Shown here piece by piece: positions 1 to 14,365 of a stretch of 64,000 bases of DNA (its first letter is position 1; every line of letters begins with the position of its first letter). The translations under genes were made by a program, and so were the position numbers. The stretch is taken from positions 62,001-126,000 of the forward strand of contig VJWM01000196.1 of assembly GCA_010909165.1 (NCBI GenBank), in the 5' to 3' direction. The notes under the pieces were generated by a model. The model was not told the origin of the DNA and searched no databases. It saw nothing but the letters and a program-made list of their open reading frames with translations. The stretch comes from Anthoceros angustus. Lineage: Eukaryota; Plantae; Anthocerotophyta.

Positions 1-1091
1 TTATATTGATTATCTTATAGAGTTAGAGTACAGTGAAAATTTATAAATATATTTGTATATAGATATTTTTAATATAAAATCTTTTGTATATATTTTACCA
101 TAAATATTATTGAAAATTTTATAATAAAAATTGAATTTTATAATATGCAATATTAAACGCCACATGTGACCTCGTATCAAATATAAGGGTATGTTGTCCA
201 TACATACACTTATGTCCCAGATATGTGGCCACGATGTTAAAACCACTACTCCATCGTCGTACTTTGTTGAGCTACAAAATATGAAGACATAGAGAAAAAC
301 ATTGTTTGAAATAGCTGATTAAAAGATTCGAATCAAAAGTCATACCATTATGATCAACATTATGAGCTGTATCCAAATCTCCAAATATCACATGTCAAAT
401 ATGTTTGTAAGAACTTTGAGAAGCTTAGAAACTTTTCAAACCCTTAAAATTGTTTCAAGTGTTTGGTATTTCCTGCCTCATGTGCCAATTGTAAATGTGC
501 GATTGTCCGTAACCCGACCACATACTATATAAGTCCTAAGTAAACTTTAACTATTATTAATCTCAATTTACTAAGAACCCCTACATATTGGACCTCATAG
601 TTTAGTTACACGGACCATGTGCCAACTAGACAGTTCAACTCCAACTTGGACAAATCAATTTCAAAATTGAATTGAACTGTTAAATAAACTGTAAATGACG
701 AACCATAATCCCACGAATAGGCCATCAAACTGAACTAGATAGAAATTACCCCAAGTTACCCCTTCGAGACCCGGTTTCATTCTTCTTCTTTTTTTTGCAC
801 ATATTCCATTGTATCTGAGGTCAAATATGAACTTTGTTTGCTCAATGTAGAGTTTTGTGCCCAACATCTCGACAAGTCAGCTAGTTCTCAATTTGTCTAA
901 ACATATTGATGGTGAAAGATGTAGAGGCTCATACCTTCAAGACCAATGGAGCCACAATCGGGGAGACTCGTACCTTCATAACCAATGGAGCCACAAATTA
1001 AATGGTTGATCATATTGCTTTTGCACACTTGTGTGGTCATCATGCATATATGTATTCATTAGCTTATGTTTGCTACCAAAAGACCATTTGA

Positions 1092-2314
1092 CTATGTTGG
1101 GCTAGGATTTTACCGGAGAAAGATGTCGAATGATGATGACGATGATGAGGTTCTAGGTTTAGACAAGCATCTCTTCACATGTGTGAATTAGTTACACAAC
1201 ATGGTGCCAACGAAGTACATCTCTCTATTCCAAGATTCAGGTTGGCGGGTAAATGAACTAAGCAACGTATGATTTTGGCGCTTTTTGTTGAGCAAGTATG
1301 CATATTCGGATGCTTTAAGGTAGAAAAGATTGATGAGGATGAAACCTGCTAAGTTTCTTCATGTGGCTATGGCTATTGGAGATGCGTTGTATGCAAGAGA
1401 TAGTTTTGAGCCACAGTTCCTAAGGTTCAAGGAGCTCGTAGCCCCATGCCGTGAGACCACCCATCATCCGCCCACCATGGCACAGGAGAAATTTGAATGA
1501 GATAAAGCGGGCTGATGTTCAAAATATAACGTGTACATTGTAAAATTATGTATTTTAACCTCACAGTCCATCGAACCTTGGGTTTTTTCTTGTAGATTCA
1601 GTTGGGAAGTCGAACTGATTCAAATTGAAATCTAATCATTACTTGCTTAGTCAACAGACTTAAAACCACGTTGGATCTTGTCCGGTAGTGGTTTGATTTT
1701 GGTCTATGTTGGGCTAGGATTTTACCGGAGAAAGATGTCGAATGATGATGACGATGATGAGGTTCTAGGTTTAGACAAGCATCTCTTCACATGTGTGAAT
1801 TAGTTACAACATGGTGCCAACAAGTACATCTCTATTCCAAGATTCAGTTGGGGTAAATGAACTAAGCAACGTATGATTTTGGCGCTTTTTGTTGAGCAAG
1901 TATGCATATTCGGATGCTTTAAGGTAGAAAAGATTGATGAGGATGAAACCTGCTAAGTTTCTTCATGTGGCTATGGCTATTGGAGATGCGTTGTCGCAAG
2001 AGATAGTTTTGAGCCCTGGTTCCTAAGGTTCAAGGAGCTCGTAGAGCCCGCCCACCGTGAGACCACCCATCATGCGTCCGCCCACCACTGACGCACAAAG
2101 GAGAAATTTGAATGAGATAAAGCGGGCTGATGTTCAAAATATAACGTGTACATTGTAAAATTATGTATTTTAACCTCACAGTCCATCGAACCTTGGGTTT
2201 TTTCTTGTAGATTCAGTTGGGAAGTCGAACTGATTCAAATTGAAATCTAATCATTACTTGCTTAGTCAACAGACTGAAAACCACGTTGGATCTTGTCCGG
2301 TAGTGGTTTGATTT
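1092..2314. repeat. Tandem duplication with ~612-bp period (1092-1700 / 1704-2314)
   Basis: CTATGTTGGGCTAGGATTTTACCGGAGAAAGATG starts at both 1092 and 1704; the copies are colinear with small indels up to ...TTGTCCGGTAGTGGTTTGATTT. Confidence 0.9.
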
Positions 2315-2536
2315 AGTTCTGTGTTGACGTGGGTTATAACTGAATTTGTCCGGTAGTGGTTTGATTTAGTTCTGTGTTGACGTGGGTTATAACTGAATTG
2401 AGCTGAGGGAGTAGCCTTTGACAACTGTCAGTCCATAAGTGTCATAACGGACGTTGACGGACTTCGTGGATATGTTTAGTTCAAGCAGTGTCCTAACGGA
2501 CGCTGACGAACTCGTGGATATGTTTAGTTCAAGCAG
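2293..2536. repeat. Short tandem duplications (53-bp x2; ~45-bp x2)
   Basis: TTGTCCGGTAGTGGTTTGATTTAGTTCTGTGTTGACGTGGGTTATAACTGAAT occurs twice (2293-2399); TAACGGACG(T/C)TGACG...GTGGATATGTTTAGTTCAAGCAG occurs twice (~2446-2536). Confidence 0.85.
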
Positions 2537-3482
2537 GTTGTGAACAAGACAATTTGGCAACATTGTATAATTATTGTTAGTTCAACAACCAGTTGAATCC
2601 TCCTAAGAAGAATATCCAATCAAAGTGGATGAATTTGTGATGAGTGAGGTGCATTGGAGAGTTCCTAAAACTCTAGATGAGCATTTGGACATGGATTCCA
2701 AAAATTTTAAAGGACCTCTATATACTCACAATTGGAGAATTCAGTTCGGCCAATTCTGGTGGGTTCCAAGCTAAATCAGCATCAAACTGAGCTCGAATTG
2801 GCGCAGAGACACAATCCATCGTGGCAACCGTTCGCTGACAATGAGCTAACGCAGCAAGTAATTATTAGCTGCAAGTTCAGTTTCTCCCGGTTCGGACCTC
2901 GAACTGAACTGCCATGGATTACCCATAATTCGGACGCACTGAGATGTGTAAGAAAACGTATTGTACATTTCGCTTTTAACAGTCGCCTCCACCAATTAGT
3001 TTTTTAATGAATTTTTTTGTCATATGTTTAGCTTACGTTTGAACTCCTGGCGGGCCAATTTTGCACGTTGTTGTGCGGAACTTGACTTGGCTTGGCTCAA
3101 GCCACTTGCTAGAAAGATGAAGTTGGTTTCTCATTCTTATCCCAGGTGAGAATACTACCTATACGAAGAATCATTGATATGTAGACTTGGAAATTATCCT
3201 CATTCTTACCTCAGGTAAGAATACTACCTATATGAGGAATCATTTATATGCAGGACTTGGAAATCAACCTTACAAAGAAAGAAGGCCTAGGACCTATGTA
3301 GAACAATACCATCTAATGATAGATTTAATATTTGGGATTAAATTGAGCTATTATATAATATCTAATTCAATTGAGTGTTAAATTTTTTTAGTTCAGTTTT
3401 ATGCCTGTCCAAAAAATCACAATTCACTTATCACAGTTTAACACAATTCAGTTCGAAAATCCAACTAAACTGATAGAATCAA

Positions 3483-3582
3483 AACTGAACTGTCTAGCTA
3501 GCACACAATTCCACGAACGAACTGAACGACTGAACTGAATTGTCTAGCTAGCAAACAATTCGACGAACTTAACGACTGAACT
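3483..3582. repeat. Imperfect tandem repeat (AACTGAA..TGTCTAGCTAGCA.ACAATTC.ACGAAC x2)
   Basis: Direct reading of the sequence. Confidence 0.7.
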
Positions 3583-3757
3583 CTACGCACCCAAGTTCGA
3601 CGGAACTGGCAGTGCGTCAGGGTCCTAAACAACGGTCTCTTTTGGAGTCTTGAACTGAGTAAGGACAAAGTCCCAATTTGAGCTTGGTAGGGTTCGTTAG
3701 GTCTTCGTTGCCTCTGCTTGATTGATTGACTGATCAATTGCCTCCTCTCGAGCTCTG

Positions 3758-4000
3758 CTCAGAAACATACGCAGAGACAAGTGGCGGATCATTATCAAGC
3801 CCAGGGGATCTGACCTTCCAGCCAGGGACGGAGCTATCCAGGGAATTAATCCTCGAACCCTCTCAAGTGTCATCCCTACCTATCCTGGGTACTGTTCACA
3901 TGCTGCAATTCGTGGGAACTTGTTGAGAAACAGAAGCACCGTCTTTCGCTGTCGACGGAAGAGCGGGCCTCGTTAACGGGGTTGCTACCTGACGAGACAT
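3758..4000 (-). pseudogene. Degenerate 5' fragment paralogous to the gene at 13078-13898
   Basis: ATG at 4000(-) reads MSRQVATPLTRP versus MCHLVAIPLSRP; DNA blocks such as AAGTGTCATCCCT.CCTA.CCTGG and CTCAGAA.CAT..GCAGA.AC match 13650-13790; stop at 3896. Confidence 0.7.
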
Positions 4001-4282
4001 GCTGAGTGAGCCGAGCACGCATCGTCTAAGTTCGACCCCACACAGCGAGTAGGTAGTCTGCCCTATTTGCCCCCAAAGAGGAAAGCCCTGAGCGGTGCCG
4101 TTTAATGTTTTCGAGCTTAGCAATTGAACTTGAAGTTGAAGAGGTTGTGTAGCCCAGGTTTCCGCGCAAGCTACCTCTTGACAATCCAAACCAGCGGCAC
4201 TGGTGAGGGTTTGAGAATCCAGGGGGAAAAGTGGGACAAGCAGGTGCTGTCTGCAGGCGAGCAGGCAGTCAGGAAGGACCCA

Positions 4283-5536
4283 ATGGCTCCACCGGGATCC
4301 AAATCCAAGATCCTGGCGGGAGATGGCAGCAGGTTCGAAATTTCTCAGGCTGCGTACGTCAAGCTTGTGTTGCACGCGCTCAAGCACAAAACGAGTAGCG
4401 TAAACGGTGTCCTCATTGGAAGAGTGACTGGCCAAGGGATACTTCAGGATGGAGCGGAGGGAAATGGCAGTGTTGAGGTTGTTGATTCTGTGCCCCTCTT
4501 TCATGGGCAGCTGGGGCTGCTTCCAATGCTTGAGCTTGCTCTCACTCAGGTAGGTGAAAGGGACATGAAATTGTCACTGTCGGATTTGTAAATCGGAGTT
4601 CCGAGAAGTTCCGAGCTCTTGGCAGGCATGGAATGGATCTCAAGTCAGGATGAGTTTTGCTGTAAACTGAGCAGACATCATTGTGTTTTTGGACAGGTTG
4701 ATGCATATCTACAAACACAAAATGATGACCTTACCATCGTCGGCTACTACCATGGGAATGAGCTGTTCGATGACACCGAGGTAAACTCTATTGCTCGCAA
4801 GATTGGCGACAAGATAGCACAATATTGTCCCGAGGCCATTATACTCCTGGTAAGTGTCAAACGTGAGCAGAAACAACGGGTCTGGGTTTTAGGGTTCAGC
4901 TTCACAGATTCTTAGCTTCTGTATGTCTGTAGCAGAGCTGACCTGACCTGATCTGATATGGATGCTCTGTCTGGCAATATCTCTGCAGCTTGATCATGGG
5001 TTACTTGGGAGTCTTACTACAAGGAACAAGACGAAACCCGTGACTCAGGTAGTGGAAGGTTGAGTGGCTGCAAGCCTGATTAACTCGTTGATTGAAGCAG
5101 TGTTACCCTAGCTTGCCCGCCTCCTCTCCCTGGCACACCGGACGCAGCAACTGCCTTTTCTCTACCCCTGAGGCTCTTCTTGGGTTTGTGTTCCAGCTGT
5201 TTGTGCGTGATAGTGCAAGAGGGTGGCACATTTCTGGAGAGCTTCAGCTGAAGGAGGCTACTGCAAATGGCATCCTTTTGGACTACATCTCAGAAGGAAG
5301 AGATCAACTGGTGGTGGATTTTGATGAGCATTTGGACGATGTTGCGAAGTATGTCCTTTTCATGCCATCTGAAAGTGCTGGTTGTGGGGGTTGGAATGAT
5401 TAGTCTTTTTCCGTCTATTCTTCGCCTATTTTGTAATTGTTTGTTGGGCTTTCTGCGGGGTTCTCCGATCTTCTGATATCCTTTGTACGACCCCGTGCTG
5501 CGCAGGGACTGGCTCAATCCCCAATTGTTCGCCTAG
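4283..5536 (+). CDS. EMC8/9: ER membrane protein complex subunit 8/9 homolog (UPF0172, MPN-like); exons 4283-4549, 4697-4849, 4989-5048, 5197-5348, 5506-5536
   Basis: Motifs AYVKLVLHALKH..VNGVLIG, DSVPLFH, LELAL, IVGYYHGN, LVVDFDEHLDD..DWLNPQL; the GT-AG introns join in frame. Confidence 0.92.
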
Positions 5537-6003
5537 GTTGTCGATTGTCTCTTCTGTTCACAAGTTTTGCCAAGGTTTGAGAGACTAGAAGGCCAGGCGC
5601 TTCCTTAAGCTACCTAACAGTAAGGCAAAAGGACTCCTTCATCAAAGCACACTGTTGCAAATCAATCAGTCACGGACACTAATGATGGCGTTTCTTGTCT
5701 GGGCCACAGCCACCGCAGAGCTTGCAAACTAGTGTGATGCCTTCGAATGTCGATGTAGGATCCAGTCCTTTGTCATACAGACATATCCATATAGGATCAG
5801 TTCTCAGCTTAAAACATGTTTGTTTGACCAGTACGATTCTACAGTAAACGGTTCGCAATAGATATCAATCATAGCCCACATAAGGGTGGGCTACTAGCAA
5901 GAAGCAGGTGGCCATGATTCGTGCCATCTTACCTGTTGCTCATTGCGTAGCATGACAGTGACAAATCTAAATTCCACTCGAGTAAGCAAAAATTCCTGAA
6001 CTC

Positions 6004-6354
6004 TTACTTGCTCTTGAAAAGCCCTTCCGTGGAAGGATGGTGGCCCGACAAGTCCAATCCGGAATCCTTGAACAGCTGCTCTGTCTCCATGAACTCCGCC
6101 TGCTCGAAAATGCGCTTGCGCATGACCTGTGCTGGCAGCTTAGATCCATCCAGCACCTCTTCCTTGCCGTTGATGAATGTAATGGTGACCTGGGGATGGT
6201 GACTGTCGGTGCGTCGCTTCACCACCACCTCGCAGTCAGGGTTGGAAGCTCGCGCCTTCCGGGAGTTACACTGCGCAAGAAACTCCAACGCGGAACACGA
6301 CCGCGGGTCCAGTGGATTGAACTCGATCTTCACCCGCGACAGATGCTTGAACAT
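6004..6354 (-). CDS. MRPL53: Mitochondrial large-subunit ribosomal protein mL53-like (116 aa, single exon)
   Basis: MFKHLSRVKIEFNPLDPR..ALEFLAQCNSRKARASNPDCEV..PQVTITFINGKEEV resembles the plant mL53 family. Confidence 0.8.
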   Translation of the reverse strand: MFKHLSRVKIEFNPLDPRSCSALEFLAQCNSRKARASNPDCEVVVKRRTDSHHPQVTITFINGKEEVLDGSKLPAQVMRKRIFEQAEFMETEQLFKDSGLDLSGHHPSTEGLFKSK

Positions 6355-6672
6355 CCTGCCTCCCTCCCAGGCTCGACCTCGTGTCTGTGTCCGTGTGCGT
6401 GTGCCTGCACCTTCCCGTTCCCGTGTCTCCGCACACGCTACCTGGCATTCCGTTGTTCTCCGCCCTGCTGTAGTGCCGCGTAGGCAGCCTAACGCAAACC
6501 CAAACCCTAAGAGAAAGGCCAAATCTGAGACGGCCACGTACGTATCACACAACGTCTACTGAAGAGCTTCAACAAGTTCCCGCCCATTTCAGTCTTTCAG
6601 TCCAGACTTCAGCAGCTGACATTGGGTGCGTGACCATCTCCAGACGACGGGATCGCGGACGCAGGGCAGGCC

Positions 6673-7301
6673 ATGGGGGTTCTCGCGGTGGTGTACAGCT
6701 TGGGGTGGCACAATTTGGTGGTCTGGGCCTTCGTATTGGCGCCCTTCTACTTCTACTGGTACTTGTGGACCAATCCGCAACGGTGGGTGCAGTTTTGCGG
6801 GACAGATGTGGATCCCAGCCACCGCATGGCCGAAGTGTCGCTGGTCCTTAAGGTTGCCCAGATCCTGGCAGTGCTCTCTGCCGCTTCTATCACCAGGATG
6901 CCTCCTTGGTACTGCGTCCTGCTCTTTGGTGTGGGCCAATTTTTGAATTACAGGTGAGGTTGTTTCAGTTATGAGGCTCTAGACCGTCGATTTGCTCTAG
7001 TTCAGGACGTTTGTCTCACAGAGCATTTCTCGTTCGCATCTCTTAATGCAGAGTTTACGACCTGCTGGGGGAAGCTGGCGTGTACTATGGAGTCCGATTC
7101 GGAAAGAATATTCCCTGGGTAACCGGTTTTCCGTTTGGGTATATGAAGGATCCCCAGTACATAGGGTCGATCCTCAGCCTGCTTGGCGTTGCCTGCTGGG
7201 TCCCTTGGAGGTTTGTCCTCGTGTGGATCATGGGTTATGTGTTTATGATGTTTCTGGAGGCCGATGAGAATCCTGCTACGCGTGCAAAGAAGATTGTTTA
7301 G
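6673..7301 (+). CDS. PLMT: Phosphatidyl-N-methylethanolamine N-methyltransferase; exons 6673-6953, 7052-7301
   Basis: PFYFYWYLWTNPQRWV..DPSHRMA, GQFLNYR|VYDLLGEAGVYYGVRFGKNIPWVTGFPFGY..DPQYIGS; in-frame GT-AG intron. Confidence 0.92.
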
Positions 7302-7442
7302 AAGGATTACACACGTATATATTCGGATATCAAAGTTTTGATACGATACAGAGGAGGATGGCAGCTTGATTAGTTTCAGGCTCGGGTCCCGGCATCATTT
7401 AACACCACCATAAAGCTATGTTTTGTTCATTTCAATTACTGG

Positions 7443-7523
7443 TACATCTTTACATGCAAGTATCTCGGATACATCTTTACATGCAAGTATCTCGGATACA
7501 TCTTTACATGCAAGTATCTCGGA
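7443..7523. repeat. 27-bp minisatellite x3 (TACATCTTTACATGCAAGTATCTCGGA)
   Basis: Three perfect copies between the convergent PLMT and NFS2 stop codons. Confidence 0.95.
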
Positions 7524-7530
7524 CTATAAT

Positions 7531-10026
<2,496 letters not shown>

Positions 10027-11359
10027 TTCGACACTCTACCAGCCCTCGGCAGGCAGAGACTCCAGAACCCGCCACACACCAATTCCGAGTCTGTAGGGGC
10101 AGATGGGGTGGGAATTTCCAGGGTTTAGGAGATGGGTCACCTAACATGAAGTGTATTCCCTGCATCTAGCCGCTTGCCCGTAAGGATTTCATTTTTCATA
10201 AAGCACTGGATAGATCGTAATTTCAGATGCCATAATCCTCATAACCAACGCCAACGGGGCCCAGGGTTCTGCTCCTTATTGGATCCACCCTGCTAAAGCA
10301 ATTGCTTGGTACTGTATGGAGTCTTCCGTCAGTGCATTTCGAGGAACATACAGGATCAAGAGATAGGGAAATCGTCCTGCTACCAATGCGTTGGCCTTTT
10401 AGCTTGCTCAGACAAGTTGCTTGCCACTCTGGGGAAAGGTTTGCAGCTGAAAGACCCCTTGGAGTCCTCCCGCATCTGTGTACAGACACTCATCATGCTG
10501 AGAGGACGTACGCTTCCCACCAGGAGTAAATCAGTACAATGAAAGCAAAGGGAGTCGTGCCTTCCTTGGTGATAGTAACTGGAAAAGGCTATGAAATAAA
10601 CGAGTGCCCACAAGGAAATTTTCACCATGCATTCATATGTGAGAGCAGCTAGTCTCATCACGCCACCCCCGTTTTGCAGGCCCTGATTGTATGGCAGCAG
10701 ATATTTCAGGAAGCAAAGCTTGTATATTCTATGCCGTTATCGGACCATGCGGATTGACACGAATACCTCGGAGGACTTCGGAGGACCCCGAGGGACAGGA
10801 GTGTCAGACGACCTAAAGTCATCAGTCCTTGAAACGTAAGTCACATGGTCCGTCGACGCATAACTGCGACAACGAAGAACGGCAGAATATGCCCATGTAC
10901 CTAGTGAAACCTGTAGCAATTGCTACTTCTTTTCTTCGTGTCCACGGACAAGACTCTGGCCTGAGAGCGAGCACAGCAGGACGTAGCACAGCTCACGAGG
11001 TCCGCACGAATTTGATCTGGAGAGGGCGACCACAAAAGCAGCTGCGATGGACTTTTCCTTCCTGAAGGTTGGATTCGATGCGTGTCCTGCGTATAGGGAA
11101 GTTATGGCTAGGGTGATGGGAACAGGCCGCGCCGCCTGAAGGTCCCGTGCCGTCGTGGGCCGGCTTTGCTTTTGATCCTTTGAGGTTGATGGACCTGTGA
11201 TTGGGAGGACCAACCTCTTGCTACCCTGTGGCAACTGGGGGGGGTGTCTGTCTCTTTAGATCTTCCTGCTCGCTCAGAAATAGGTGCAAGTTTGAACAAG
11301 CAATGTTTGTGTTGCAGGGGAATAATCTTATCAGAACTGACGATCTGGAGTCGCCGACC

Positions 11360-12484
11360 ATGATGCCGAGGATATCGGCTGGCTACTCGATCTCAACCCA
11401 GGATTCTGACATACATGCTGAGGAAGCTGGCCCTTCCACTGCAGATACATTCGACCACCTTCAGACTTTACAAGTTTCTCCCAAAGCCCTGGCAGCTAGA
11501 GCTCCGGATGTCCCATTTCTCCAGGCGGGTGATGATGCATCGGCACAGAATACAGCATTGTTGATGCCTCCTCCAAAACCAAAGATACGAGCTAAAATTC
11601 CACTGGAGAAGGGCTACAGTCAGATGGATTGGCTGAAGCTGACACAAACCAAGCCTGATCTCGCAGGTTTGGCTGCTCTTGGATCTCATCGTCGTGGTGA
11701 CGACCTGCTTTCAATGTGGTAGCTACCTAACACCCGTCTGTACTACAGGATTGAAGGGTCGGTCGAGCAGGAGGCCCATTTCCATGGAAGAGGTAAAGCT
11801 CCACAAAACTGATGAGGATGCATGGACTGTGCTGCGTGGCCGTGTGTACAACATCTCGCCTTACCTCAGATTCCACCCTGGAGGTATCCAATCCAAATTT
11901 CCTTCTCTTTCCACAGTTGTTAACATCAACACAAGGGGCAGTAGGGTGCTTTCATTGCCCTTGAGACGGTCCATTTAGCTGGAAACTCCCCAACAACTGT
12001 CAGACTCTGTTCCAAGTCACAGCTGTGTTCATGCCAGCCAAAGTAAACCTCAATGCCGAAACTGGGCTTTCTCACTCGAGCAAACCCAGGAAAGCGCTTA
12101 GAGCGTCATGGTGGTCACTGGAGAATCGATAACCAGACCATGCTAAGTGGCGAGTGCATTGTAATACTGTGCAGAGTCTGCCCTTTGCATCCAGTTTTAC
12201 AGTCGTGTCAAACAGTATGTTAAGCTCTATTTTAACATACTGACTGTAGCTCCATTTTTTTGGCAGGACGGGACATGCTGATCAAGGGTGCAGGGAGGGA
12301 CTGCACGTCTTTATTCAGTATCCTCTGCTCCTTGATACATTTGTCCACCTGTTCGTGGGCCATGGCATTGCTATCCTTAATTGACTATTCAGACAAGTAC
12401 CATGCATGGGTGAATGCTGAATTTTTGTTAGAGAAGTGTTTAGTTGGAGTCTTAGACGTTACCCCTCAGGGAGATACAGCCTAA
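11360..12484 (+). CDS. RLF: Cytochrome b5 domain protein, RLF-like; exons ~11360-11666, 11749-11883, 12267-12317, 12393-12484 (start uncertain)
   Basis: [39 protein letters not shown] (heme motif), [16 protein letters not shown] after splicing. Confidence 0.88.
12318..12392 (+). other. U12-type (minor spliceosome) GT-AG intron
   Basis: 5' site GTATCCTC, branch-like TATCCTTAAT at 12372-12381 about 11 nt before the AG, no polypyrimidine tract; removal restores LFNKYH. Confidence 0.8.
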
Positions 12485-13077
12485 GTAGCCAAGCGACGAC
12501 AGACCTGGGCAACGGCTTACTTCGGCTTCGACCATGGCGTCTGCTTTATCACCGTCTGGCACGTTTAGCTTAGCTCATTCAGACAAACTGAAATCTGCCC
12601 AAGAAACAATTGAATGCAATATGATCTCTGTTTATCTTGACTACAAAGGTGGGAGGTTTAACCTTGATATTAACATTATTTAATCTCTTATGAAGTTGAA
12701 GTCACGTTAAAAAGCCATTATTCAACCTTCCCAGTTTCACACGCAACCAGAAACCTACAGAATTGATTCTCAGATAATTATTTCCAATTGTACATACTCC
12801 AAATATAAATACTTTCCAATAGGTATTTAACACACTTGATAGGGATGTTTCTTCCATTATTTACGGATGGCCTGTTGCGCTTCTTGTTTAGCGAATCCCG
12901 TTAGAAAATTTGAGAAATGAGACTGCACAGGTAGCTTGTGTTGAAGAGCTCTGTGGTTGGTGAAGGGCTGCAGGTAGTCTACATACGTTGTTGTTTCGTA
13001 GCGGAACAGAGACTGGGTTGGATGGGCTGGAAACTTGAATCCAGGTATGCACATATGCAAGTAGAGGGCGAAAAAAC

Positions 13078-13898
13078 TCAACTGCGCTTGGTTTTGCGCC
13101 GTGGTTTCTTGCTGGGCTTTCCAGTTTGTTCTGAAAAACCAGTGGCTCCAGATACATTACTCTGTTCAGCCGTGTCAGCACCAGGCGTAGCTGATGTCTC
13201 GCCTTTCGCTGTATCGACACTGAAAGCGTTGTCTTTGGGCTGGTTCCTGAAGACTGTGTTCTTGAATACTTGATCGGGGACGTAGTAGTTTCCGAGCCAC
13301 CACACAAAGATAAGTCCCGCACTGCAGACGGGCCGGCATGTCAGCTCCTACTTCATAATGCCAAAAGAAATAGCTGGATGTCATCGGGAAAGCTGCAAGA
13401 AGGACCTGTCACTAACCTGACCAAAGCGAACTGGACAGGATCAGCTCCACTCTTGATGCCGAAAAACGATGGAGACGGCCCCGTCTGCTCGATCACAGCG
13501 CCCGTCTCGCCGGATTGCCTGAATGGTGGCTCAAATGCCCTGCCCAGAGCATCCAAGAAAGAGCGCACGCTCTGTCCTCCTGCCCCTGAAATCGTCTCCT
13601 CAGGCTTTTGAATCAGCTTGACAGAGAACTTAAACCCATCCGTGATATCCTCAGAAGCATCTGCAGATACCCCCATCATCATCCCCAGAGAATCCGACCT
13701 CCCGACCAGAGGTGGGGCAGTCCAGGGTAGTGATGCCCCATCCCAGGAAGTGTCATCCCTGCCTACCCTGGCCACTACAGAGCCGACATGCTGCACCTGC
13801 TTGAAACCCGATGAGAAATGGAAGCACGATGTTTTTATGCTGTCCAACGCAGAGCAGGCGTGCGGCCTCGACAATGGGATCGCTACCAGATGACACAT
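13078..13898 (-). CDS. Uncharacterised probable plastid single-pass membrane protein (241 aa); exons 13898-13417, 13321-13078
   Basis: A 95-nt GT-AG intron joins two ORFs in frame to give FALVSAGLIFVWWLGNYYVPDQVFK (TM-like); transit-like N-terminus and basic C-terminus. Confidence 0.7.
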
Positions 13899-14167
13899 GC
13901 TGGCCGAGCCGAGTATGCACCTAGGTGAAAAGCCGGCCGCAAGCCGGGTAGAGTCTTACCCTATTTCCCACCCACAAGAGGAAAGCACCGTTTAGGGTTA
14001 CTGAGCTCAGCAGTTGAAGTTGGACGAGCTTGCGGAGTTCTTGCTTCCTCGCGAACTAACCCGGACCATCCAAAGCAGCAGCACTGGCCAAGGGGGTGAG
14101 AATCCAGGTGAAGAAGCGGGGCAAGCACGTGTTGCCTGCAGGCAAGAAGGCGGACAGGAAGGATACC
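13899..14167. promoter_or_regulatory. Putative bidirectional promoter/5' leaders (unknown gene / TOM7)
   Basis: 269 bp between divergent ATGs; a homologous copy lies at 4001-4282. Confidence 0.7.
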
Positions 14168-14365
14168 ATGGCTCCACCGGGATCCAAGTCCAAGAAGGAC
14201 ATCCTGTCTCCGCAGACTTTGAACACGGTGATCAAGGAGTGGCCGACATGGCTGCTGAAGAAGGCCAAGACTGCCACGCACTACGGATTCATTCCCCTGG
14301 TCATCTTCATCGGCATGCGCTCAGAGCCCCGGCCGCAGCTTTCGCAGCTCCTCAGCCCCGTCTAG
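14168..14365 (+). CDS. TOM7: Mitochondrial import receptor subunit TOM7 (65 aa)
   Basis: [43 protein letters not shown] is the plant TOM7 signature. Confidence 0.93.

What the first reader, a model, noticed from the sequence alone, without database searches (positions are those of the whole stretch)
3758..4310. EMC8/9 has captured the TOM7 promoter, 5' leader and first nine codons
Seen: ~3758-4310 is colinear with ~13650-14195. Both EMC8/9 and TOM7 begin MAPPGSKSK (ATGGCTCCACCGGGATCCAA.TCCAAG), their leaders align (GAGAATCCAGG, CTGCAGGC, CAGGAAGGA, CCCTATTT.CC..AAGAGGAAAGC), and the homology continues into the divergent gene's CDS, which survives only as a relic upstream of EMC8/9. Inference: an old duplication of a bidirectional promoter module fused to the EMC8/9 body, making a chimeric housekeeping gene and possibly co-regulating ER and mitochondrial membrane-protein insertion machinery.
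Basis: partly seen in the sequence, partly recalled or inferred. Interest (0 to 1): 0.8.

Follow-up and report, generated by a model that had tools for sequence, protein, structure and literature searches.

The report
EMC8 gene with a borrowed TOM7 front end
In this moss-like land plant, a 0.55-kb copy of the TOM7 gene's promoter region, leader and first 9-11 codons was joined in frame to the housekeeping gene EMC8/9 at its old start codon; the fused gene is transcribed and correctly spliced, making it a clean but ordinary example of a chimeric gene made by partial duplication.

Summary
Window 3758/3790-4310 is colinear with 13650/13674-14195: 69% identity over 543 columns, blastn E about 1e-53, and these are the only two copies in the window.

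Copy B is the native head-to-head pair. It holds an unnamed but conserved land-plant gene "X" (minus strand, ATG 13898), 269 nt of spacer, and TOM7 (ATG 14168). Copy A holds a broken relic of X's first ~83 codons, the spacer, the TOM7 leader and codons 1-9. Allowing a 6-nt gap it also holds codons Ile-Leu. It joins EMC8/9 exactly where relatives have the EMC8 start codon (ATG there, CTG here at 4313-4315).

The direction is TOM7 to EMC8:
- No other plant EMC8 examined has this N-terminus.
- TOM7 of two relatives starts MAP..S.KGKGK.
- A syntenic contig of a related species has an unfused EMC8 (MAGDG...) lying just downstream of X.

A spliced RNA contig runs from about 4066 (217 nt upstream of the ATG, inside the module) through all five EMC8 exons. 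A second species, about 93% identical, carries the same fused start.

Co-regulation with TOM7 is not supported. The captured leader has diverged fast (14 unique changes against 1) and has lost a TOM7-conserved telomere-repeat-like motif.

This is a new member of a known kind and of modest interest.

The parts
3758..4000 (-). Relic of the first ~83 codons of gene X (copy A). The ATG homologous to X's start is at 4000-3998. The frame stops after 34 codons (TGA 3898-3896), and the homology then continues in another frame.
   Evidence: Alignments; ORF list; 71% identity to 13650-13898. A 255-nt RNA contig covers 3696-3950, strand unknown.
4001..4065 (.). Captured spacer between the relic X start and the 5' end of the EMC8 RNA contig. 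This is the candidate core promoter of the chimeric gene.
   Evidence: 61% identical to 13899-13960. No RNA contig lies on 3951-4069, though a hole there is not proof of absence.
4066..4282 (+). EMC8 5' UTR, derived entirely from the TOM7 leader. It contains a new uATG at 4105 with a 15-codon uORF.
   Evidence: RNA contig record 9 of run X2 starts at about 4066 and is continuous to the ATG. Identity to the TOM7 leader is 68-78%.
4283..4315 (+). Captured TOM7 codons: MAPPGSKSK (26/27 nt identical to TOM7), plus Ile-Leu shared after a 6-nt gap. The CTG at 4313-4315 sits where relatives have the EMC8 initiator ATG.
   Evidence: Unchanged over 4283-4312 in organism B.
4316..4549 (+). Native part of EMC8/9 exon 1 (AGDGSRFEISQ... 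to ...LELALTQ).
   Evidence: Pfam PF03665, E 7.8e-22. Homology to L001 EMC8 begins at 4314. GT..AG splice seen in RNA.
4697..4849 (+). EMC8/9 exon 2.
   Evidence: RNA joints; tblastn to relatives.
4989..5048 (+). EMC8/9 exon 3.
   Evidence: RNA joints; blastn to L001.
5197..5348 (+). EMC8/9 exon 4.
   Evidence: RNA joints; translation.
5506..5536 (+). EMC8/9 exon 5, ending DWLNPQLFA and a stop codon.
   Evidence: RNA joint; translation; same C-terminus as plant EMC8.
13078..13898 (-). Intact gene X, the source of the relic. Exon 1 is 13898-13417 and exon 2 is 13321-13078, giving 241 aa. It has a transit-peptide-like N-terminus and a C-terminal membrane helix with the motif FVWWLGNYYVPD. It belongs to an unnamed family found across land plants.
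   Evidence: The splice is confirmed by spliced protein P0117 of the relative. Family hits.
13650..14206 (+). Source module (copy B): X codons 1-83 (minus strand), the 269-nt X-TOM7 spacer and leader, and TOM7 codons 1-9 (1-13 with the gap).
14168..14365 (+). TOM7, a single exon of 65 aa.
   Evidence: Pfam PF08038, E 2e-18; relatives.

Best explanation
A DNA-level partial duplication copied about 0.55 kb of the head-to-head X/TOM7 locus. The copy contained the first ~83 codons of X, the shared spacer with its promoter elements, the TOM7 leader and the first 9-11 TOM7 codons. It was joined in frame to EMC8/9 at that gene's initiator codon, where only a TG is shared at the joint (CTG in place of ATG). 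The result is a chimeric EMC8/9. Its mRNA starts inside the captured module, its 5' UTR is an ex-TOM7 leader, and its protein carries [11 protein letters not shown] in place of Met1. The rest of the gene, including all four introns, is orthologous EMC8/9. The X fragment decayed to a relic that may still be transcribed. The event postdates the split from the lineage of contig L001, where EMC8 is unfused and lies directly downstream of X. It predates the split from 'organism B', which shares the fusion. It went together with, or followed, a local rearrangement that placed EMC8 on the other side of the MRPL53-PEMT-NFS2 block in the opposite orientation. Shown here: the homology, the breakpoints, the direction, the relic, transcription across the joint, splicing, and presence in a second species. 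Inferred: that the captured spacer is the working promoter, and the molecular route of the rearrangement.
For: The homology is significant and bounded. Gene identities come from Pfam: PF03665 at E 7.8e-22 and PF08038 at E 2e-18. None of the 16 plant EMC8 N-termini I read has the TOM7-like start; they begin M + 1-6 residues + Y-[EQ]-[IL]. The closest relative starts MAGDGIKYQIGQ, against ...IL-AGDGSRFEISQ here. EMC8 homology to L001 stops at window 4314, the old ATG. TOM7 of L001 and P0087 starts MAPSASNKGKGK / MAPRSDSKGKGK, so the peptide is native to TOM7. L001 synteny is MRPL53, PEMT, NFS2, EMC8(-), X(-), TOM7(+), TsaD. Copies A and B differ at 27% of sites, against 43-50% to L001. X is conserved (40-47% aa) and spliced in RNA of the relative. 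The relic has a stop and a frameshift. An RNA contig covers 4070-4546 | 4694-4848 | 4988-5045 | 5194-5348 | 5506-5950+ with four GT..AG joints. A DNA contig of organism B spans 4243-4627 with no change in 4283-4312.
Against: No transcription start site was mapped; a contig end is only approximate. Strandedness is unknown, and the run is RNA by inference from its spliced contig. I could not lay reads on the TOM7 copy (cap reached), so relative expression is unknown. Whether this is the only EMC8/9 copy in the genome could not be checked. No outgroup with this synteny was found: Sphagnum, Ceratodon, an unnamed metagenome contig (L004) and a liverwort lack it. So it is not settled which EMC8 position, the window's or L001's, is ancestral. 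Gene conversion between the copies could make the duplication look younger than it is.
Confidence: 0.85

Rival explanations
1. The chimera is the same, but the history is simpler. EMC8 already sat left of MRPL53 (the window's position is ancestral), and only the 0.55-kb module was copied 9.9 kb leftward onto its start codon. The L001 lineage moved EMC8 next to X independently.
For: This needs only one small dispersed duplication in this lineage. Synteny to the left of MRPL53 differs between the window and L001 anyway, and a cytochrome-b5-like gene occupies the L001 EMC8 slot.
Against: It requires two independent events linking EMC8 to the same X/TOM7 locus in two lineages. An ancestral position next to X would explain why this particular module was the one captured. 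No outgroup decides between the two.
Confidence: 0.35
2. The captured TOM7 module keeps EMC8 and TOM7 co-regulated, coupling the ER and mitochondrial membrane-protein insertion machineries.
For: The two genes share a promoter-derived sequence. The first 27 coding nt are 26/27 identical against about 71% for the module, and the same 30 nt are unchanged in organism B. In yeast the EMC was reported to contact the TOM complex via Tom5 (PMC4602282, read).
Against: With L001 as outgroup, the proximal leader shows 14 unique changes in the EMC8 copy against 1 in the TOM7 copy. TAGGGTT is conserved in TOM7 of the window and L001 but is TAATGTT in the EMC8 copy, where it creates a uORF. The distal leader of organism B does not align at 90% or more. 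The spacer is only 61% identical. The same review notes that Tom5 is unknown outside animals and fungi.
Confidence: 0.1
3. This copy is a redundant or decaying paralogue, and the working EMC8/9 lies elsewhere in the genome.
For: Only 64 kb of the genome was visible to me. Several amino-acid changes separate organisms A and B in exon 1.
Against: The reading frame is intact and all four introns are spliced. RNA contig depth is 88. The domain core shows only a synonymous change between A and B, and the other changes sit in the variable N-terminal and loop regions. It is syntenic with the only EMC8 on L001. No EMC8 relic remains at the L001 position.
Confidence: 0.05
4. The direction is reversed (TOM7 took its front end from EMC8), or the similarity is due to chance or misassembly.
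For: None beyond the bare similarity.
Against: E is 1e-53. Outgroup N-termini point the other way. X is intact beside TOM7 and broken beside EMC8. The junction is spanned by an RNA contig and by a DNA contig of another species.
Confidence: 0.02

Closest known systems
Chimeric genes formed by partial or tandem DNA duplication that recruit a neighbour's promoter, 5' UTR and first codons (Drosophila: PMC1463047, PMC5460883; review PMC3449122). Identified from titles and abstracts listed, plus my own knowledge of the field.
   Same: There are two parental genes and sharp homology breakpoints. The donor stays intact. Introns are retained, so the event was DNA-based and not retroposition. The fusion is in frame, and transcription starts in the recruited 5' part.
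   Different: The recipient here is not a spare new gene. It is the syntenic, apparently sole, copy of a conserved housekeeping gene, which lost only its Met1. The donor is a head-to-head promoter, so a relic of the third gene came along. The fusion is old (JC distance about 0.36 between the copies) and is shared by two species.
Plant fusion and chimeric genes (Oryza surveys: PMC9199173, PMC3673630). Titles and abstracts only.
   Same: These are lineage-specific plant genes built from pieces of neighbouring or duplicated genes, with expression evidence.
   Different: Those surveys concern mostly young, often dispensable genes in grasses. This case is a bryophyte-like plant and an essential-complex subunit, and the protein-level contribution is minimal (11 residues).
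Promoter replacement ("promoter swapping") by rearrangement. From my own knowledge, not tested here.
   Same: A gene's regulatory front end is replaced wholesale by that of an unrelated gene.
   Different: Here the donor was duplicated rather than disrupted, and a few donor codons are translated.

Membership tests
EMC8/9 (Pfam PF03665, UPF0172; MPN-like fold) | Match to the family profile above the curated cut-off | tested here: met
   Exon 1 alone scores 78.6 bits against a cut-off of 24.4, E 7.8e-22, residues 18-89.
EMC8/9 (Pfam PF03665, UPF0172; MPN-like fold) | Full-length colinearity with plant EMC8/9, including the C-terminal DWLNP.LF motif | tested here: met
   Exons 2-5 translate to sequences matching Sphagnum, Selaginella and Coffea EMC8/9. 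The joined protein was not searched as one sequence.
TOM7 (Pfam PF08038) | Match to the family profile above the cut-off, with the plant C-terminal motif ...HYGFIPL..IG...P.P...QLLSPV | tested here: met
   66.2 bits against a cut-off of 27, E 2e-18. 70-86% identical to moss TOM7.
Chimeric gene by DNA-based partial duplication | 5' part homologous to one gene and 3' part to another, with a defined junction and an intact donor | tested here: met
   Donor homology ends at 4309/4315, and EMC8 orthology starts at 4314-4316. TOM7 and X are intact at 13078-14365.
Chimeric gene by DNA-based partial duplication | Transcript spans the junction and the open frame is kept | tested here: met
   The RNA contig is continuous over 4070-4546 and spliced onward. 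The ORF is open from 4283.
Chimeric gene by DNA-based partial duplication | Not a retrocopy: introns retained at orthologous positions | tested here: met
   There are four GT..AG introns. L001 EMC8 shows the same exon blocks.
Bidirectional (head-to-head) promoter | Two divergent genes with starts less than 1 kb apart | tested here: met
   The X ATG at 13898 and the TOM7 ATG at 14168 are 269 nt apart. The gap is 254 nt in L001.
Bidirectional (head-to-head) promoter | Both directions transcribed from the shared spacer | tested here: inconclusive
   In the L001 species one unstranded RNA contig covers TOM7, the spacer and spliced X. At copy A, RNA lies on both sides (3696-3950 and 4070 onward), but the strand is unknown.

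The most novel reading that the evidence does not exclude
The roughly 40 nt around the shared start (proximal leader plus the first ten codons) may be kept nearly identical in EMC8 and TOM7 as a common translational or mRNA-localisation element, maintained by selection or by recurrent short-tract gene conversion. That would couple output of the ER insertase subunit and the mitochondrial import pore subunit. The evidence does not exclude this. The identity is 26/27 nt between the two copies, and the same stretch shows no change in organism B's EMC8. By contrast, the same TOM7 stretch differs at 12 of 28 sites from the L001 species, and the rest of the module is about 70% identical.
Probability: 0.08. 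Interest if true: 0.55.

Novelty: new member of a known kind. Interest (0 to 1): 0.35.

Why it matters
This is an unusually complete natural example of promoter and 5'-end replacement in a conserved single-copy housekeeping gene. The donor, the recipient, the exact in-frame junction at the old start codon, the decaying by-product (the relic of X), the unfused state in a relative, transcript evidence and persistence in a second species are all visible. It shows that the N-terminus and the whole regulatory front end of an EMC subunit can be swapped without loss of the gene. It also offers a test case for how a duplicated bidirectional promoter diverges: the TOM7 leader is constrained while the captured copy is relaxed. 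It does not change what is known about EMC or TOM function. For annotation, gene models should start EMC8/9 at 4283 and should not call the relic a gene.

Tried and rejected
- **Outgroup synteny.** I fetched EMC8 loci of Sphagnum (L002), Ceratodon (L003) and an unnamed metagenome contig (L004), TOM7 loci of a moss from metagenomes (L005-L007), and the X locus of the liverwort Calypogeia (L008). None has EMC8, X and TOM7 within 10 kb of each other. The ancestral position of EMC8 therefore stays open.
- **Metagenome scan.** An exact scan of metagenome contigs for the 27-nt shared start found nothing.
- **Naming X.** Pfam gave no hit. The ESM Atlas feature search gave only unnamed Streptophyta clusters at 0.79-0.83. 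The word search found only the relative's own proteins. The full HMMER search found six weak hits, the five I examined being land-plant proteins, all unnamed.
- **Transposon capture.** I looked for terminal inverted repeats around the chimeric gene as a sign of transposon-mediated capture. Only short, weak pairs turned up inside the repeat-rich left flank, and none brackets the gene.
- **EMC8 relic.** I looked for a relic of EMC8 between the cytochrome-b5-like gene and X and found none.
- **Earlier findings.** The scan's earlier findings had nothing on this locus.
- **Simple rearrangement models.** I considered a tandem duplication of the 9.9-kb unit, and a single inversion with staggered breaks. 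I rejected both because they predict the wrong orientation of the MRPL53-NFS2 block, or an intact X beside EMC8.
- The joined (spliced) EMC8 protein was not built or searched. Exons and the ORF window:4124-4588 were used by reference.

Full report
**1. The observation**

Reading the two stretches and aligning them confirms a colinear similarity. blastn gives window 3790-4310 against 13674-14195 at 69.1% identity over 543 columns, E about 1e-53. A weak 21-nt extension reaches 3758/13650. There is no third copy in the 64-kb window. The repeat finder recovers the same pair.

Identity is uneven along the module:

| Segment | Identity |
|---|---|
| Part overlapping the divergent gene's coding sequence | 71% |
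| Distal spacer | 61% |
| Distal leader | 68% |
| 77 nt just upstream of the ATG | 78% |
| First 27 coding nt | 26/27 |
| Flanks on either side | 42-48% (noise) |

The ATGs are at 4283 (EMC8/9) and 14168 (TOM7). After the shared [12 protein letters not shown]7 continues K-D-I-L and EMC8 continues I-L. With a 6-nt gap the shared ATCCTG therefore extends the homology to 4315/14206.

**2. The genes**

- *EMC8/9.* Exon 1 at 4283-4549 matches Pfam PF03665 (EMC8/9, UPF0172) at E 7.8e-22.
- *TOM7.* The 65-codon ORF at 14168-14365 matches PF08038 (TOM7) at E 2e-18.
- *Gene X.* On the minus strand, 269 nt from the TOM7 ATG, a two-exon gene starts at 13898 (exon 1 to 13417; exon 2 13321-13078; 241 aa). 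It has no Pfam hit. It is 40-47% identical to a gene at the same place in a relative's contig. Its intron is confirmed by a spliced protein and RNA contig of that relative. A full HMMER search finds weak relatives, the examined ones all from land plants: Calypogeia, Diphasiastrum, Cryptomeria and Selaginella. They share a C-terminal membrane helix motif and all are unnamed. X is therefore a real, fast-evolving gene of unknown function.
- *The relic in copy A.* The ATG homologous to X's start (4000-3998) opens a frame that stops after 34 codons. The similarity then continues in another frame.

**3. Direction and junction**

- None of the plant EMC8/9 N-termini I read carries the TOM7-like start. 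They begin with Met, one to six residues, then Y-[EQ]-[IL].
- The closest relative (P0001, on Logan contig L001) starts MAGDGIKYQIGQ. The window reads ...K-I-L-AGDGSRFEISQ. The CTG at 4313-4315 therefore occupies the place of the ancestral ATG.
- blastn homology between the window's EMC8 and L001's EMC8 stops at 4314. The 18 nt upstream are unrelated.
- TOM7 of L001 and of another relative begin MAPSASNKGKGK and MAPRSDSKGKGK. The peptide is therefore native to TOM7.
- X is intact beside TOM7 and broken beside EMC8.

All of this gives the direction TOM7 to EMC8. The only sequence shared at the joint is TG (cTG/aTG), which is typical of end-joining or template-switch events. That last statement is inference.

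**4. Synteny and age**

L001 (17.8 kb) carries MRPL53(-), PEMT(+), NFS2(-), EMC8(-), X(-), TOM7(+), TsaD(+). The window carries chimeric EMC8(+), MRPL53(-), PEMT(+), NFS2(-), a cytochrome-b5-like gene(+), X(-), TOM7(+), TsaD(+). EMC8 thus lies within 10 kb of TOM7 in both species. In L001 it sits 320 nt downstream of X on the same strand and is unfused.

In a three-way alignment, copies A and B differ at 27% of sites, while each differs from L001 at 43-50%. Barring gene conversion, the duplication postdates the split from the L001 lineage.

Which EMC8 position is ancestral could not be settled. Sphagnum, Ceratodon, two metagenome-derived contig sets (one of them moss) and a liverwort lack this synteny. 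I could not derive the window's arrangement from L001's by a single inversion or tandem duplication. A template-switch duplication followed by loss of the parental EMC8 copy, or two separate events, remain possible.

**5. Expression**

One public run from the same sample as the best DNA holder behaves as RNA. A contig of 1,875 nt lies on 4070-4546, 4694-4848, 4988-5045, 5194-5348 and 5506-5950+, with four GT..AG joints. These are exactly the exon model derived from homology.

Its 5' end (about 4066) is 217 nt upstream of the ATG and well inside the captured module. The whole 5' UTR is therefore ex-TOM7 leader, and the transcript reads through the junction. A second, shallower contig (3696-3950) lies over the relic of X. 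No contig covers 3951-4069, which is where a divergent core promoter would sit. Contig ends are approximate and unstranded, so promoter use is inferred and not mapped.

The first in-frame ATG on this mRNA is 4283. The next Met would delete most of the conserved domain.

**6. A second species**

DNA contigs of 'organism B', about 91-95% identical, cover 3807-4059 and 4243-4995. They carry the same fused start:
- There is no change in 4283-4312.
- CTG becomes TTG, which is still Leu.
- Several changes follow just after the joint; among them, R to K and F to Y restore residues common in other plants' EMC8.

The fusion is therefore fixed and older than that split. This is also independent evidence against misassembly.

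**7. Constraint**

With L001 as outgroup, the proximal leader shows 14 changes unique to the EMC8 copy and 1 unique to the TOM7 copy. The TOM7 leader is constrained and the captured one is not.

A telomere-repeat-like TAGGGTT is present in TOM7's leader in both the window and L001. It reads TAATGTT in the EMC8 copy, where it creates a uATG at 4105 and a 15-codon uORF. These points argue against lasting co-regulation.

The one strongly kept piece is the start itself, at 26/27 nt. Given 71% background identity, one or fewer mismatches in 27 has a probability of about 0.0014 (my calculation). TOM7's own N-terminus differs at 12 of 28 sites from L001. Selection on the short shared peptide or start context, or short-tract gene conversion, could each explain this, and I cannot tell them apart.

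**8. Comparison with what is known**

Chimeric genes that recruit a neighbour's promoter, 5' UTR and first codons through partial DNA duplication are well documented in Drosophila and rice (PMC1463047, PMC5460883, PMC3449122, PMC9199173, PMC3673630, titles and abstracts). This case meets all the defining features I could test.

It differs in three ways. The recipient is the syntenic copy of a conserved housekeeping gene that lost only Met1. The donor is a head-to-head promoter. The fusion is old and shared by two species.

The EMC-TOM contact reported in yeast is via Tom5, which is unknown outside animals and fungi (PMC4602282). It therefore lends no support to a functional link here.

**9. 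Limits**

- The taxon was not determined beyond a bryophyte-like land plant. The best EMC8 and TOM7 hits are mosses, and the best hit for X is a liverwort.
- Only one read-laying run was available, so TOM7 and X expression in this species was not examined.
- Copy number of EMC8/9 in the whole genome is unknown.
- The spliced EMC8 protein was not joined or searched as one sequence. Exons and an ORF reference were used instead.

**Verdict**

The co-regulation idea is not supported. This is a new member of a known kind and of modest interest.

Noticed in passing
window 13991-13999 and 4103-4109; L001 about 8975 (alignment columns 117-127): A telomere-repeat-like motif (TTTAGGGTT / TAGGGTTT) sits in the TOM7 5' leader of both species. 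In the EMC8 copy it is mutated to TAATGTT, which creates a uATG at 4105 and a 15-codon uORF ending at 4152.
   Followed up: partly
window 14091-14167 against L001 9027-9112: The roughly 90 nt upstream of the TOM7 ATG are far better conserved between species (27% difference) than the rest of the spacer (over 50%). This suggests a functional 5' UTR element in TOM7.
   Followed up: partly
L003 10001-10618 (Ceratodon purpureus CM026422.1): EMC8/9 of Ceratodon is a single uninterrupted 618-nt exon, whereas the window, L001 and Sphagnum (3.5-kb gene) have introns. It may be a retrogene that replaced the parent.
   Followed up: no
window 11200-12500 (+): A cytochrome-b5-domain gene (heme-binding motif in ...HPGG...) lies between NFS2 and X, exactly where EMC8 lies in L001. 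It is absent from the 17.8-kb L001 contig.
   Followed up: partly
window 13078-13898 (-); P0117-P0123: Gene X belongs to an unnamed land-plant family with a transit-peptide-like N-terminus and a conserved C-terminal helix motif, [FI]FWLGNY.VPD.IF[KR][DN]TVF. Its function is unknown.
   Followed up: partly
window 5536-6550: The RNA contig that carries EMC8 runs on for about 580 nt past 5950 into the convergent MRPL53 gene (6004-6354, minus strand). The 3' ends of the two genes therefore probably overlap or abut.
   Followed up: no
window 1087-2398 and 3130-3714: A tandem repeat with a period of 604-615 bp, several short direct repeats, and 31-mers at 3685-3714 that reach a depth of about 25,000 in organism B. 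The left flank of the module is repeat- or transposon-rich, which may hide the original left junction.
   Followed up: partly
L009 on L001 9502-7816: In the L001 species a single RNA contig covers TOM7, the whole 254-nt spacer and spliced X. The head-to-head transcripts therefore abut or overlap.
   Followed up: yes
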